Positions 6,656-34,615 of a stretch of DNA of 64,000 bases are shown piece by piece. The stretch lies in sequence record OP310983.1. One strand, 5' to 3'. Position numbers and translations under genes: made by a program. A model generated the notes under the pieces. The model worked only from the letters and a program-made list of their open reading frames with translations. It was not told the DNA's origin and did no database searches. Position 1 is the first letter of the stretch. The number at the start of each line of letters is the position of its first letter.

Positions 6656-8899
6656 ATGAGCGTACATGCCCTAAGAGAACTGTTTAAACACAAAGGCGAA
6701 AAGAATTACGAAGTCTTCTCAATGGAAGATTTCATTGGCCGCCTAGAAAGTGAAATTGGTCTAAATGACAGCGTTGTTAGTCAAGGTCGTTCCCTTATTA
6801 GCAGCATTTCACATGAAAACTTCGGTACCGTGCAAGCTACCGACATTCAAGATGCCGCTGCAATTTATAACAAAATGCAAATGCTCGTTAACGACTATGG
6901 TTTCGAACGAGTAAGTTCCAGTGATCCTCAAGTACGTGCTCGTGAAGAACGTGTCCGTGAGAACCAAATCACTGCTGCTACCATGGCTGCTATCGCCTGT
7001 GCTGATGAAACTAAATATATCCGTGCACTACGTGGTATTACCAAAGCTAAAGCTTCTAATGAAGATCATGTTAAGGTTGTACAGCATCAGTTCAATGGCC
7101 CTGCTGGTGGCATTCAAGTATTCGAAAATGGTGTTGGCCTAGAGAACTATAACGAGAAGTCACAGCGTGATTTCCGTGTTGTAACTATTGGTTATAACCT
7201 AGCTGCTAGCCGTCAGGATGAATTCGCTGAGCGTATCTATCCGACCACCGTTATCAACCCGATTGAAGGTGGTGTTGTTCAGGTTCTTCCTTACATCGCT
7301 GTAATGAAAGACGTTTACCACGAAGTATCCGGCGTTAAGATGGATAACGAAGAAGTGAACATGGTAGAAGCCTATCGTGATCCTTCCATCCTCGACGACG
7401 AAAGCATTGCACTAATTCCTGCCCTAGATCCGGCTGGTTCCAATGCTGACTTCTTCGTAGACCCGGCTCTTGTTCCTCCGTACACCATCAAGAACGAGCA
7501 GAACCTAACTATCACTACTGCTCCGCTAAAAGCGAACGTACGTCTTGATCTAATGGGTAACTCCAATGCTAACCTACTCATCCAGCGTGGCATGCTTGAA
7601 GTTTCTGACACCATTGATCCGGCTGGTCGTCTAAAGAACCTATTCGTTCTACTCGGTGGTAAAGTTGTTAAGTTCAAGGTTGACCGTCTACCTCGCGCTG
7701 TGTTCCAGCCCGATCTAGTTGGTGATACCCGGAACGCTGTTATCCGTTTCGATAGCGACGATCTAGTTGTTAGTGGCGATACCACTTTCATCGATGGTTC
7801 AGCTGACGGTGTTATCAATGATCTTAAGACCGCTAAACTAAGCCTACGTCTAAGCGTTGGTTTTGGTGGTACAATCAGCCTATCCAAAGGCGATTCTAAG
7901 TTTGGTGCTACCGACACTTACGTCGATAAAGTTCTAAACGAAGATGGTCAGGTAATGGATAATGCTGACCCGGCTGTTAAAGCTATTCTAGATCAGCTAA
8001 CTGACCTAGCGGTTATCGGTTTCGAACTAGACACTCGCTTCACCAACACTAACCGTCGTCAGCGTGGTCACCTACTACAGACCCGTGCGCTACAGTTCCG
8101 TCATCCGATCCCGATGCACGCTCCTGTAACTCTACCGATGGACACCATGACCGATGAAGGTCCGGGTGAGGTTGTTAAAGCTCTAACTGTTAACACCAAC
8201 ATCCGTAACAGCAACAACGCTGTTAAGCGCATGCTTAACTACCTTGCTCAACTACGTGAAGTTGTACACAATGGTTACAACCGTCCGAAGTTTGGTATCA
8301 TCGAAGGTGCACTATCCGCTGTAATGCGTCCGACCTATCGTTACAAAGAACTAGATCTTGAGAAAGTCATCGACACCATCAAGTCTAAAGATCGTTGGGA
8401 CGACGTTTGCGCTGCGATCCTAAACTGTGTTAAAGCTGAGCTATTCCCGGCTCACCGTGATTCCAACATTGAAGCTGCCTTCCGTGTTATCTCCGGTAAC
8501 CAGGATGAAACTCCGATGTATCTCTTCTGCTCCGACAAAGAGATTGCTAACTATCTAATGACTAAAGGTGACGACCGTACTCTAGGTGCTTATCTCAAGT
8601 ACGATATCGTTTCCACCAACAACCAGCTATTTGATGGTAAGCTAGTTGTAATTCCGACCCGCGCAGTACAACAAGAAAACGACATCCTCTCCTGGGGCCA
8701 GTTCTTCTACGTATCTACTGTTATCGCTGACCTACCGATCACTCGTGGTGGTCACCAGGTTACTCGCGAAATCGCGGCCATTCCGTTCAACCTACACGTC
8801 AACAACATTCCGTTCGCGCTAGAGTTCAAGATCACTGGCTTCCAGAAAGTCATGGGCGAAACTCAGTTCAACGGTAAGCTTGCTGATCTTAAGCCGTGA
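6656..8899 (+). CDS. gp120: major capsid protein (747 aa), propeptide removed at ...GVGLE|NYNEK
   Basis: Length and sequence recognised as phiKZ gp120; strongly biased codon usage; S/A/G-x-E protease sites in N-terminal part. Confidence 0.95.
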   Translation: MSVHALRELFKHKGEKNYEVFSMEDFIGRLESEIGLNDSVVSQGRSLISSISHENFGTVQATDIQDAAAIYNKMQMLVNDYGFERVSSSDPQVRAREERVRENQITAATMAAIACADETKYIRALRGITKAKASNEDHVKVVQHQFNGPAGGIQVFENGVGLENYNEKSQRDFRVVTIGYNLAASRQDEFAERIYPTTVINPIEGGVVQVLPYIAVMKDVYHEVSGVKMDNEEVNMVEAYRDPSILDDESIALIPALDPAGSNADFFVDPALVPPYTIKNEQNLTITTAPLKANVRLDLMGNSNANLLIQRGMLEVSDTIDPAGRLKNLFVLLGGKVVKFKVDRLPRAVFQPDLVGDTRNAVIRFDSDDLVVSGDTTFIDGSADGVINDLKTAKLSLRLSVGFGGTISLSKGDSKFGATDTYVDKVLNEDGQVMDNADPAVKAILDQLTDLAVIGFELDTRFTNTNRRQRGHLLQTRALQFRHPIPMHAPVTLPMDTMTDEGPGEVVKALTVNTNIRNSNNAVKRMLNYLAQLREVVHNGYNRPKFGIIEGALSAVMRPTYRYKELDLEKVIDTIKSKDRWDDVCAAILNCVKAELFPAHRDSNIEAAFRVISGNQDETPMYLFCSDKEIANYLMTKGDDRTLGAYLKYDIVSTNNQLFDGKLVVIPTRAVQQENDILSWGQFFYVSTVIADLPITRGGHQVTREIAAIPFNLHVNNIPFALEFKITGFQKVMGETQFNGKLADLKP

Positions 8900-8980
8900 G
8901 CTGGAAAGGGTTACCGTTATCTAGAAAATGGGACTATCCGTTATTTGGAAGACGGTAATGCCCGGAAGTTAGAAGAGTAA
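8900..8980 (+). other. in-frame 26-codon extension after capsid UGA (candidate readthrough tail)
   Basis: AGKGYRYLENGTIRYLEDGNARKLEE*; same frame as gp120; no own start or SD; terminator only after the TAA. Confidence 0.7.
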
Positions 8981-8984
8981 CAGA

Positions 8985-9015
8985 CATAGGCCCTCCCTTC
9001 GGGGAGGGCTTTATG
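8985..9015 (+). terminator. intrinsic terminator after capsid extension
   Basis: CATAG-GCCCTCCC-ttcg-GGGAGGGC-TTTATG. Confidence 0.85.
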
Positions 9016-9020
9016 TTGTA

Positions 9021-9054
9021 TTACATTAAAAAAAGTTTAAGATCTATATTACAG
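9021..9054 (+). promoter_or_regulatory. early (vRNAP) promoter
   Basis: TATATTAC at 9045-9052 (phiKZ early consensus) with upstream A-tract; 33/34 identical to 60736-60769. Confidence 0.8.
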
Positions 9055-9095
9055 TAATGATCATGATCTTCTAATTTAAAAATAGGTTAATCCAA

Positions 9096-9548
9096 ATGAA
9101 CGTTCAATTATTTCCAGAAGTCATCGAAAGATGGCAAGATGCCCTAAGGGTATCTCTTATAGAAAAAAATACCATGGTAGATAATAAGATGTCTACCGTA
9201 GATGATGATAAATACATTAATACTTTCTTTGAAGAATTCCATCCTGTTCAGGATGCCTTTATGCCCAAAGGGCTAGAGGACTTTATTACTGATTATGCCA
9301 AGAAAAACATTGAGGAGATCCTTCAAGAAAAACAGTTTAAGCGGGCCACCGAAAAGTTATATTGTTCGAGTGACCCGCATAAATGGCAGAAATCAAGTAA
9401 TAAGGAAAAGAGTGAATCCTTTAAGGGAAGGTCCGTACATCAAACTAAAAAGAGGCTCCCCAACATTGTAGATTTGGAGGCCGTTGTGATTAAGGTAGAT
9501 TTCAATGGTAATACTAAAAATTGCGGGGCTTACTCAAGTATCAGTTAA
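9096..9548 (+). CDS. hypothetical protein (gp121)
   Basis: TAGG SD, downstream of early promoter. Confidence 0.7.
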   Translation: MNVQLFPEVIERWQDALRVSLIEKNTMVDNKMSTVDDDKYINTFFEEFHPVQDAFMPKGLEDFITDYAKKNIEEILQEKQFKRATEKLYCSSDPHKWQKSSNKEKSESFKGRSVHQTKKRLPNIVDLEAVVIKVDFNGNTKNCGAYSSIS

Positions 9549-15206: not shown

Positions 15207-15650
15207 TTAACTGCTTTCAAATTCAAGAGTTACTGGTATTGTTGGTATCCACGACAAGTTATTAAAGTATGGATGTATCGTAACCGTATTCCCAGTAATA
15301 GGTTGCGGTTGTATCTCATCTATAATAAATGGAATACCGTAAACATCTCTTAATTTTTCAGCTACTTCTAAATTATCAGTATAGTCAGTTGGTTTACCCG
15401 GTACTTTTATACCAAGACAGTACTCTGGTAAAGAGCGTCTATTAAAGTAAATAACTGTCTCACCTTTAAAATAAAGTGAACTGGTCTTCGCTCTCATTGT
15501 TGTTTTGGCATTTGTACCAGTTGCTAAGAATGTATCAGTCCCTATAAATTCAACATCATCAACAGTTAAATCCCTAGGCTTACCATTATTATCTTTAGGT
15601 TTATTAGCCACATTCCAAGCAGCTACTAATTCAGCTCTTGTATCAGCCAT
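15207..15650 (-). CDS. virion structural protein, YxRL-family paralogue (gp126)
   Basis: VIYFNRRSL motif similar to gp127/gp143/gp158; in structural operon. Confidence 0.65.
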   Translation of the reverse strand: MADTRAELVAAWNVANKPKDNNGKPRDLTVDDVEFIGTDTFLATGTNAKTTMRAKTSSLYFKGETVIYFNRRSLPEYCLGIKVPGKPTDYTDNLEVAEKLRDVYGIPFIIDEIQPQPITGNTVTIHPYFNNLSWIPTIPVTLEFESS

Positions 15651-15658
15651 TACACACC

Positions 15659-16534
<876 letters not shown>

Positions 16535-34081: not shown

Positions 34082-34615
34082 ATGCAGGATATCTTTCCGT
34101 ATGACATGGCATCGAGGAATGCGCTAGTAAAACTTGCGCGGGATGATTTAAAAATAAACTTCAAACCAGAAACAGTTACATTTGAAGATATGTTTTTTAG
34201 TCCAACCACGATTGAGCCTGGACGTACATTTATTGAAATGATCGACATCACTACTGACATTAAGTACATGTTAACTTACCGTCGGTTAGATTTTGCTGAT
34301 CCACGTGCTATTGGTGAAGGATCTATCCTTAAGATAGTTGGTACTTTAACACCTAAAGCAATTGCTGAAGAAATTAACCGTTCACGAGGTTGGAAGCTTG
34401 GTCCAGATGATGTTTCATTTGATACAACACCAATCAATGCAACTACGGATGTTGTTCCATACACGATAGTAGCTATGTCGAGTAGCTATGCTTACTATGG
34501 TGAATGTAATATACTAATCCAACGTATTGATGATACGTCAGATACTATCCGACTATTAGAGAATGGTGCAGCACGTTATCTAGAAAATGGTCAAATCCGT
34601 TATCTAGAAAGTTAA
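34082..34615 (+). CDS. virion-type protein with YxRLD motif and C-terminal RxLENG repeats (gp143)
   Basis: LTYRRLDF; ends RLLENGAARYLENGQIRYLES. Confidence 0.75.
   Translation: MQDIFPYDMASRNALVKLARDDLKINFKPETVTFEDMFFSPTTIEPGRTFIEMIDITTDIKYMLTYRRLDFADPRAIGEGSILKIVGTLTPKAIAEEINRSRGWKLGPDDVSFDTTPINATTDVVPYTIVAMSSSYAYYGECNILIQRIDDTSDTIRLLENGAARYLENGQIRYLES

What the first reader, a model, noticed from the sequence alone, without database searches (positions are those of the whole stretch)
8908..8963. Long RNA hairpin about 10 nt downstream of the capsid UGA, overlaid on the extension codons
Seen: 8910-8932 pairs with 8937-8959 over about 23 positions (TTACCGT/ACGGTAA core) with only two A-A mismatches, several G-U pairs and an ACUA loop. 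The sequence therefore encodes both the RYLENG repeats and a stable stem. Established: 3' stem-loops or pseudoknots a few nt after a stop stimulate readthrough in several viruses, and the bacterial SECIS lies just 3' of the Sec UGA. Inference: this is a readthrough stimulator. Selenocysteine insertion via host SelB is a less likely alternative because the loop lacks the usual G-rich SECIS features.
Basis: partly seen in the sequence, partly recalled or inferred. Interest (0 to 1): 0.75.

Follow-up and report, generated by a model that had tools for sequence, protein, structure and literature searches.

The report
Leaky-stop tail on phiKZ capsid
The hairpin is real, but it lies inside a short conserved coding stretch that phiKZ-type giant phages apparently translate by reading through the capsid gene's UGA stop, and its pairing comes mostly from the repeated peptide it encodes rather than from proven selection as a readthrough signal.

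Summary
The window is a phiKZ-type Pseudomonas jumbo phage. The gene is major capsid protein gp120 (6656-8899). The hairpin at 8908-8963 exists as described (-26.1 kcal/mol, z -4.5, among about a dozen most stable local folds in 64 kb).

The larger result is comparative. In 24 of 24 distinct relatives that carry it, the capsid stop is UGA, followed in frame by 26-30 codons encoding a conserved three-fold R-x-x-E-D-G repeat. Nine relatives without it all end in UAA. The same repeat forms the normally translated C-terminus of virion protein gp143 (profile match E 1.3e-9). A translated readthrough tail is therefore strongly supported.

Evidence that the hairpin stimulates readthrough is mixed.
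- **Against:** the repeat's codons are self-complementary, so random synonymous recodings fold as well as the native sequence (mean z -0.18). The fold topology also differs between the two clades.
- **For:** the stem starts 8 nt after UGA. It is stronger than the gp143 tail RNA in 14 of 15 genomes. Cognate arms pair about 4 kcal/mol better than swapped arms.

Selenocysteine insertion is unlikely. No report of this readthrough was found in the papers searched.

The parts
6656..8896 (+). Major capsid protein gene (phiKZ gp120, 747 codons)
   Evidence: ORF. 99-100% DNA identity to phiKZ-type genomes, annotated PHIKZ120 / major head protein. Pfam PhiKZ_MCP, E 5e-228.
8897..8899 (+). Capsid stop codon UGA, proposed to be leaky; followed by G here and by a purine in 23 of 24 homologues
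   Evidence: UGA in 24/24 distinct homologues that have the extension. UAA in 9/9 that lack it. One further relative (L086) has UAA followed by a longer in-frame extension. UGA ends only 9 of 55 annotated genes in this region of phiKZ.
8900..8977 (+). 26-codon in-frame extension encoding AGKG-YRYLENG-TIRYLEDG-NARKLEE, a three-fold R-x-x-E-D-G repeat
   Evidence: Peptide alignments. Only open frame in all 23 sequences, with pN/pS 0.64 against 0.83 and 1.03 in the other frames. hhalign to the gp143 family tail: probability 96.4%, E 1.3e-9.
8978..8980 (+). Second stop (UAA) ending the extension
   Evidence: In homologues the second stop varies among TAA, TGA and TAG.
8908..8963 (+). The RNA hairpin of the finding (about 22-23 pairs, loop 8932-8937)
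8988..9011 (+). Intrinsic terminator of the capsid transcript (G+C-rich stem, then a U-rich tail), placed after the extension rather than after the UGA
   Evidence: A similar G+C-rich hairpin-plus-U-tract sequence follows the extension in the six GenBank relatives (read from the sequences; not folded).
34541..34612 (+). Paralogous copy of the repeat module: the C-terminal 24 residues of gp143 (gene 34082-34615), translated conventionally
   Evidence: The module is conserved in the full-length members among 47 gp143 homologues. The RNA contains the same inner stem but is weaker overall.

Best explanation
The capsid mRNA of phiKZ-type phages ends in a leaky UGA. Most ribosomes terminate there and make the 747-residue gp120. 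A minority insert an amino acid, most likely Trp from the host's near-cognate tRNA, since phiKZ carries no suppressor tRNA. These ribosomes continue for 26 codons to a UAA that sits just before the transcription terminator. The product is a minor gp120 isoform with a C-terminal tail of three R-x-x-E-D-G repeats. This is the same module that ends virion protein gp143, a DUF7941-family protein. It would be displayed at the outward-facing capsid C-terminus on some tens of the 1620 subunits. The hairpin is mainly the RNA shadow of that peptide. The unit C-CGU-UAU-CUN-GAA-GAC-GG is self-complementary in 8 of 9 positions, so two tandem units must pair. Because the stem begins 8 nt after the UGA, it would abut the ribosome's mRNA entrance while the stop is being decoded and may raise readthrough. 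That step is inferred, not shown. Shown by comparison: the coupling of UGA to the extension, the coding-type conservation, the homology to the gp143 tail, and the existence of the hairpin. Inferred: the tRNA used, the level of readthrough, the display on the capsid, and any stimulatory role of the stem.
For: - **Stop codon coupled to the extension.** UGA plus extension in 24/24 distinct homologues across seven named genera. UAA and no such extension in 9/9, including two relatives from clades that otherwise have it, L033 and L088.
- **Coding-type conservation.** The frame is open in 23/23, the other frames are closed, and pN/pS is lowest in frame 0. Length changes are whole codons.
- **Homology to a translated tail.** Profile match to the gp143 tail, E 1.3e-9. 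That tail is conserved in the full-length members among 47 gp143 homologues.
- **Terminator position.** The terminator follows the extension.
- **No suppressor tRNA.** The seven tRNAs of phiKZ's tRNA cluster (the 50-kb end of the genome that was scanned) are Thr, Asn x2, Asp, Met, Pro and Leu; the 64-kb window has none.
- **Stop context.** A purine follows the UGA in 23/24, and a small residue (Pro, Ala, Gly or Val) precedes it.
- **Hairpin as by-product.** Synonymous recoding folds as well as the native sequence in 23/23 (mean z -0.18). The same inner stem appears in the gp143 tail RNA. Synonymous sites are not extra-conserved.
- **Possible extra RNA selection.** The extension RNA is more stable than the gp143 tail RNA in 14/15 genomes (-27.6 against -20.7 kcal/mol). 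Cognate arms beat swapped arms in 21/23. The basal stem in the phiKZ clade is 91.7% paired, with 12 double-change cells against 3.5 expected.
- **C-terminus location.** The capsid structure paper places the gp120 C-terminal arm in contact with the outer vertex protein gp244 (PMC11297242).
Against: - No protein or ribosome-footprint evidence for the extended isoform was available. Two cryo-EM papers model gp120 only to residue 747 and do not mention an extension.
- None of 120 capsid homologues has the tail fused without a stop.
- The tail alone gives a low-confidence structure model (pLDDT 59).
- On the hairpin, the more robust covariation measures are not significant (52/500 and 19/500 shuffles). 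The sequences are related, so the paired tests overstate independence.
- The extension has a higher G+C content than the gp143 tail in most genomes.
Confidence: 0.6

Rival explanations
1. One reading: the hairpin is a selected cis-acting readthrough stimulator. It acts like the 3' stem-loops and pseudoknots of eukaryotic viruses by resisting the ribosomal helicase while UGA is in the A site and so favouring a near-cognate tRNA over release factor 2.
For: The spacer is 8 nt in the phiKZ/201phi2-1 clade and 6 nt to the first conserved stem in the Psa21 clade. Every homologue folds to between -23 and -36 kcal/mol directly after the stop. The extension RNA is stronger than the paralogous gp143 tail RNA in 14/15 genomes. 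Arm-swapping costs about 4 kcal/mol. Compensatory pairs occur at variable amino-acid positions of the basal stem.
Against: There is no excess stability over synonymous recoding and no excess synonymous conservation. The family-wide consensus is only -3.65 kcal/mol. The Psa21 clade has a different topology built from invariant codons. A relative with a longer in-frame extension (L086) has no stem near its stop. From my own knowledge, the classic bacterial case, Q-beta, needs no such structure, and I know of no bacterial example of structure-stimulated readthrough.
Confidence: 0.3
2. The UGA encodes selenocysteine, and the hairpin is a bacterial SECIS element bound by host SelB.
For: A hairpin lies directly 3' of an in-frame UGA. 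The apical loop is about 33 nt from the UGA, which is within the range I recall for bacterial SECIS searches.
Against: Apical loops differ in size and sequence between homologues, with no conserved G/U feature. The Psa21 clade has another topology. No Rfam family matches at E up to 10. The 23-bp stem is much longer than SECIS upper stems. The UGA sits at a linker position with variable neighbouring residues.
Confidence: 0.03
3. The region is not translated. The hairpin is a 3'-UTR element, such as an RNase III site or an mRNA-stabilising stem ahead of the terminator, and the apparent peptide conservation reflects conservation of the RNA.
For: A long, nearly perfect duplex of about 22 bp sits just upstream of the terminator.
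Against: Invariant Glu codons are kept although their pairing partners are not (pairs 37-42 are only 26-65% paired). The frame-specific openness and pN/pS point to coding. The peptide matches a genuinely translated tail at E 1.3e-9. The perfect UGA/UAA split would be unexplained.
Confidence: 0.05

Closest known systems
Q-beta A1 (readthrough) protein: a leaky UGA at the end of the coat gene of an RNA coliphage
   Same: A UGA at the end of the major capsid gene is followed by a purine and an in-frame extension. A minor extended coat isoform would be built into the capsid, with the UGA decoded by host near-cognate tRNA (from my own knowledge of Q-beta).
   Different: This is a dsDNA jumbo phage of Pseudomonas. 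The extension is only 26-30 residues rather than about 195. It is a repeat module shared with another virion protein. A strong hairpin overlies it. No product has yet been demonstrated.
3' stem-loop or pseudoknot stimulated readthrough in eukaryotic viruses (MuLV gag-pol pseudoknot; extended stem-loops about 8 nt after UGA in alphaviruses and coltiviruses)
   Same: A UGA stop, an 8-nt spacer, and then a long stable stem that lies within the extension's coding sequence.
   Different: This would involve a bacterial ribosome and release factor 2. The covariation support is weak, the fold is not conserved in topology across clades, and its stability is explained by the encoded peptide.
C-terminally extended capsid or tail proteins made by programmed frameshifting in dsDNA phages (T7 10A/10B; Listeria phages A118 and PSA; Ig-like domains appended by frameshift)
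   Same: A fixed minority of a major structural protein receives an extra surface-exposed C-terminal piece by recoding. One relative here (L086) even carries an in-frame Big_2 Ig-like domain after the capsid stop.
   Different: The mechanism here is in-frame stop readthrough. No frameshift or slippery site is conserved.
C-terminal tail of phiKZ gp143 (DUF7941 family)
   Same: The same three-fold R-x-L-E-D-G module at the extreme C-terminus, and part of the same nucleotide stem.
   Different: The gp143 tail is translated conventionally and its RNA is less structured. Its function is unknown. gp143 has been proposed as a lysis regulator (PMC12894885). DUF7941 proteins have been proposed to form head-to-tail filaments (bioRxiv 10.64898/2026.04.21.720040).

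Membership tests
Programmed stop-codon readthrough (Q-beta A1 type) | In-frame open extension after the stop, with no start codon of its own | tested here: met
   26-30 open codons in 24/24 homologues. The other frames carry stops in 22/23 and 19/23. There is no conserved in-frame start.
Programmed stop-codon readthrough (Q-beta A1 type) | The leaky stop codon identity is conserved and tied to the presence of the extension | tested here: met
   UGA in 24/24 with the extension and UAA in 9/9 without it. The regional background is TAA 40, TGA 9, TAG 6.
Programmed stop-codon readthrough (Q-beta A1 type) | The extension is under protein-level selection | tested here: met
   pN/pS is 0.64 in frame 0 against 0.83 and 1.03 in the others. 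R, E and G positions are invariant with varying codons. hhalign to the gp143 tail gives E 1.3e-9.
Programmed stop-codon readthrough (Q-beta A1 type) | The extended protein is detected, and the amino acid inserted at the stop is known | not testable with these tools
   No proteomic or ribosome-profiling data were accessible. The papers searched do not mention it.
3' RNA-structure-stimulated readthrough | A stable structure begins about 6-9 nt after the stop | tested here: met
   The spacer is 8 nt in phiKZ and its clade, and 6 nt to the CCGG stem in the Psa21 clade.
3' RNA-structure-stimulated readthrough | The structure is conserved and supported by compensatory changes | tested here: inconclusive
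   In the phiKZ clade the basal stem is 91.7% paired, with 12 double-change cells against 3.5 expected. The robust measures are not significant. The whole-family consensus is -3.65 kcal/mol, and the Psa21 clade has a different topology.
3' RNA-structure-stimulated readthrough | Stability exceeds what the encoded peptide imposes | tested here: inconclusive
   Not met against synonymous recoding (mean z -0.18; 0/23 below -1.64). Partly met against the paralogous gp143 tail RNA (14/15 genomes) and in the arm-swap test (21/23).
3' RNA-structure-stimulated readthrough | Readthrough depends on the stem (disruptive and compensatory mutants) | not testable with these tools
   This needs a reporter assay.
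Bacterial SECIS / selenocysteine insertion | A conserved apical loop and bulge recognised by SelB | tested here: not met
   Loops vary in length and sequence across homologues. No Rfam match.
Intrinsic (rho-independent) terminator | A G+C-rich stem directly followed by a U tract | tested here: not met
   The 8908-8963 stem is followed by GGAAGUUAGAAG. The true terminator is at 8988-9011.
R-x-L-E-D-G terminal repeat module (gp143-type tail) | Two to three octad repeats R-x-x-E-(D/N/S)-G-x-x at a protein terminus | tested here: met
   Alignments. hhalign. 38 further proteins in a 1.84-billion-protein library match at E<=0.001, many of them at a terminus.

The most novel reading that the evidence does not exclude
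phiKZ-type phages use hairpin-assisted UGA readthrough. This would be the first RNA-structure-stimulated readthrough (other than selenocysteine insertion) that I know of on a bacterial ribosome. It would place a short docking tail on a few percent of capsid subunits. Because the tail is the same module that ends the DUF7941 protein gp143, it would tether gp143-type proteins or their filaments to the head. The peptide repeat and the RNA stem would then be two readings of one palindromic sequence that evolved together.
Probability: 0.15. Interest if true: 0.85.

Novelty: new member of a known kind. Interest (0 to 1): 0.7.

Why it matters
phiKZ is the model nucleus-forming jumbo phage, with near-atomic capsid and whole-virion structures and many proteomic surveys. 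Neither of the two structure papers read mentions a second, extended form of its major capsid protein, nor did the literature searches find one. If the readthrough is real, it has several consequences:

- Each head would carry some tens of subunits bearing a tail that icosahedral averaging cannot see. These could anchor still-unplaced virion proteins.
- Annotation of the seven named genera examined here would need a recoding feature.
- Bacterial recoding would gain a second natural capsid-readthrough system after Q-beta. This one is genetically tractable in Pseudomonas and has a built-in test of whether mRNA structure can modulate termination by release factor 2.
- It is a clear example of a peptide repeat and an RNA stem being encoded by the same palindromic sequence. 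That is a warning for structure-based inference inside coding repeats.

Tried and rejected
- **Rfam.** A scan of 8700-9200 at E<=10 gave only sub-threshold chance hits and no SECIS match.
- **Pfam and PDB sequence searches.** Pfam on five extension peptides found nothing. A PDB sequence search with the peptide found nothing.
- **Fused homologues.** I looked for capsid homologues with the tail fused without a stop. None of 120 has it. Relatives lacking the tail instead have acidic or Thr/Pro-rich C-termini.
- **Structure of the tail alone.** AlphaFold2 on the 30-residue tail with 20 sequences gave low confidence (pLDDT 59) and only a weak beta-hairpin.
- **Inverted-repeat scan.** A DNA-level scan of the window misses the stem because many pairs are G-U. 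I replaced it with a sliding RNA fold.
- **Frameshift or hopping.** No slippery or matching take-off and landing codons are conserved around the stop.
- **Phage suppressor tRNA.** None is present in phiKZ's tRNA cluster or in the window.
- **Contexts of small module-bearing ORFs.** Three small stand-alone ORFs carrying the module were looked up. Their neighbourhoods have no annotation and were uninformative.
- **Literature.** Seven searches found no report of readthrough in a phiKZ-type capsid gene.

Full report
**Identity of the locus**

The window is a phiKZ-type Pseudomonas aeruginosa jumbo phage. The segment 6656-9100 is 100% identical to one GenBank isolate and 99.2% identical to phiKZ itself. 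The ORF 6656-8899 is PHIKZ120, the 747-residue major capsid protein. It ends in TGA at 8897-8899. An intrinsic terminator lies at 8988-9011, and the next gene, gp121, starts at 9096.

**The observation**

The hairpin is as described. 8910-8932 pairs with 8937-8959 as 21 pairs, with two A-A mismatches and an ACUA loop. RNAfold adds GGG/CCC at the base, giving 8908-8963. The energy is -26.1 kcal/mol with z -4.5, and no dinucleotide shuffle folds as well. In a sliding 61-nt scan of the + strand (mean -9.6, sd 4.1), only about eleven other places are as stable, and several of those lie at annotated gene ends. The stem base is 8 nt after the UGA.

**What surrounds it**

In six GenBank relatives from other genera (Phabio, PS119XW, Psa21, 201phi2-1, phiPA3, PA1C), the capsid gene also ends in TGA. 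In each, 26-30 in-frame codons follow that encode a recognisably similar peptide.

IMG/VR, metagenome and further GenBank loci extend this to 24 distinct sequences, all with TGA. Their consensus is x-G-K/P-G-x-x-R-x-x-E-D-G-T-x-R-Y-x-E-D-G-x-x-x-R-x-L-E.

Nine distinct relatives lack this peptide, and every one ends in TAA. Two of them, L033 and L088, come from clades that otherwise have the extension (similar C-terminal sequences; no tree was built), so loss of the extension appears to go with a switch to the preferred stop. In 55 annotated phiKZ genes of this region the stops are TAA 40, TGA 9 and TAG 6.

Evidence that the extension frame is coding:
- It is open in 23/23 sequences, while the other frames have stops in 22/23 and 19/23.
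- Pooled pN/pS is 0.64 in frame, against 0.83 and 1.03 out of frame.
- Third codon positions vary most.
- Length differences are whole codons.
- The terminator follows the extension, not the UGA.

**A paralogous, normally translated copy**

A tblastn search with the 26-residue peptide found a second site in every phiKZ genome. In the window it is the C-terminus of gp143 (34082-34615), which ends ...IRLLENGAARYLENGQIRYLES. The full-length members among 47 gp143 homologues, down to 33% identity, end in the same three-fold repeat. A profile of the capsid extensions aligns to that tail with probability 96.4% and E 1.3e-9. The module is therefore a genuine protein element.

What is known about gp143:
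- It models confidently (pLDDT 90.9). The tail is at pLDDT 75-86 and shows beta-bridges with a period of eight residues.
- Its body resembles the baseplate protein gp127.
- A 2026 preprint groups gp126, gp127 and gp143 as DUF7941 proteins. It proposes that they polymerise head-to-tail, through a linker that docks on the next protomer's N-terminal domain.
- Another paper proposes that gp143 is a lysis regulator.

A profile search of 1.84 billion proteins found 38 further proteins with the module at E<=0.001. In many of them it sits at a terminus.

**Is the hairpin selected, or a by-product?**

The unit C-CGU-UAU-CUN-GAA-GAC-GG is self-complementary in 8 of 9 positions, counting G-U pairs. This can be read directly from the sequence. 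Two tandem units must therefore pair.

Evidence that it is a by-product of the peptide:
- I resampled synonymous codons by capsid codon usage, 500 times per sequence. This gave folds as stable as the native one in all 23 homologues (mean z -0.18, none below -1.64; phiKZ z -1.08).
- Synonymous sites in the extension are less conserved than in the capsid body, not more.
- RNAalifold over all 23 sequences keeps only the CCGU/ACGG and GG/CC pairs, at -3.65 kcal/mol.
- The phiKZ-derived structure is 71% paired family-wide, against 37-51% for slid controls.
- The two clades differ in topology. The phiKZ/201phi2-1 clade has a long-range basal stem. The Psa21 clade has nested local stems built from invariant codons, plus a second GGUACC hairpin.
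- The gp143 tail RNA contains the same inner stem.

Evidence for some RNA-level selection:
- In 15 genomes with both genes, the extension RNA is more stable than an equal length of gp143 tail RNA in 14 (-27.6 against -20.7 kcal/mol). G+C content is a confounder here.
- The 5' and 3' halves pair better with their own partner than with halves from divergent homologues in 21/23 cases (-26.9 against -23.0).
- In the phiKZ clade the basal stem is 91.7% paired, with 12 double-change cells against 3.5 expected. However, the two measures that are robust to relatedness are not significant.

I conclude that the stem is largely imposed by the peptide, with suggestive but unproven extra selection.

**Mechanism**

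The extension is in frame, so the event is stop readthrough rather than frameshifting. No slippery or hop-matching codons are conserved. phiKZ's tRNA cluster holds seven tRNAs (Thr, Asn x2, Asp, Met, Pro, Leu) with no suppressor among them, and the 64-kb window has none; the rest of the genome was not scanned. The base after UGA is a purine in 23/24 sequences, and the preceding residue is Pro, Ala, Gly or Val. From my own knowledge, UGA followed by A or G is the leakiest context in E. coli and is read by tRNA-Trp.

Selenocysteine is unlikely. The apical loops vary, the topology differs between clades, and Rfam finds nothing.

With UGA in the A site, a stem starting 8 nt later sits at the mRNA entrance. 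This is the same geometry as frameshift and eukaryotic readthrough stimulators, so a stimulatory role is plausible but untested.

The capsid structure paper models gp120 to residue 747. It shows the C-terminal arm reaching the outer protein gp244 at vertices, and it leaves 330 chains unidentified. An extension would therefore probably be external and sub-stoichiometric, and so invisible to icosahedral averaging.

**Wider hints**

One relative (L086) has TAA followed in frame by 95 open codons. These encode a Big_2 Ig-like domain (30.1 bits) plus the same repeat, then a stop and a terminator. There is no called gene, no obvious start, and no stem near the stop. Goslar and FLC9 capsid genes also end in TGA with 28 and 18 open codons of unrelated sequence, while four other outgroups end in TAA. 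I did not follow these up.

**Novelty**

Neither the two phiKZ structure papers nor seven full-text searches mention readthrough in a phiKZ-type capsid gene. The closest known system is the Q-beta A1 protein. I rate this a new member of programmed readthrough, with an open possibility that the stem makes it a new variant.

Noticed in passing
window 34082-34615 (+), tail at 34541-34612: gp143 (virion structural protein, DUF7941 family, proposed lysis regulator) ends in the same three-fold R-x-L-E-(D/N)-G repeat as the capsid extension. Part of the nucleotide sequence is identical (CGTTATCTAGAAAATGG at 8915-8931 and 34574-34590).
   Followed up: yes
L086:2660-2991: A capsid homologue (62% identical over the C-terminal 228 residues) ends in TAA and is followed in frame by 95 stop-free codons. 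These encode a Big_2 Ig-like domain plus the same repeat module, then TAA and a terminator. There is no called gene and no obvious start. This may be a larger recoded capsid extension behind a UAA stop.
   Followed up: partly
window 9030-9052 (core TCTATATTAC at 9043-9052): An A-rich stretch followed by TCTATATTAC, between the capsid terminator and gp121, is conserved in most of the six GenBank relatives read (201phi2-1 has a variant of the core). It explains why DNA alignments run past the capsid stop. It resembles the phiKZ early-promoter consensus as I remember it.
   Followed up: no
L080 (Goslar) and L084 (FLC9), capsid gene ends: Two distant chimallivirus capsid genes also end in TGA, followed by 28 and 18 open in-frame codons of unrelated sequence. 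Four other outgroups end in TAA. This could be chance or a wider habit of capsid readthrough.
   Followed up: no
P0168-P0205: The R-L-L-E-D-G octad repeat occurs in 38 further proteins from metagenomes. In many it sits at the extreme C- or N-terminus, for example after a tail-fibre-like protein (P0199) or an FN3-like domain (P0192). It also forms 48-60-residue stand-alone ORFs. No Pfam family matched the five capsid extension peptides tested.
   Followed up: partly
P0066-P0120 C-termini: Capsid homologues that lack the readthrough tail often carry acidic, Gly-rich or Thr/Pro-rich low-complexity C-terminal tails instead. The capsid C-terminus appears to be a variable site.
   Followed up: no
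L043:1072-1170 (Viktualia) and the HPP-Temi record (H198): Some GenBank records annotate a small hypothetical protein over the extension region. In Viktualia it is in a different frame from the capsid. Annotators appear to have noticed open sequence there without linking it to the capsid gene.
   Followed up: no
window 15207-16531 (-): gp126 and gp127, the other two phiKZ DUF7941 proteins, lack the R-x-L-E-D-G tail. Among phiKZ's three DUF7941 proteins, only gp143 carries the module.
   Followed up: yes
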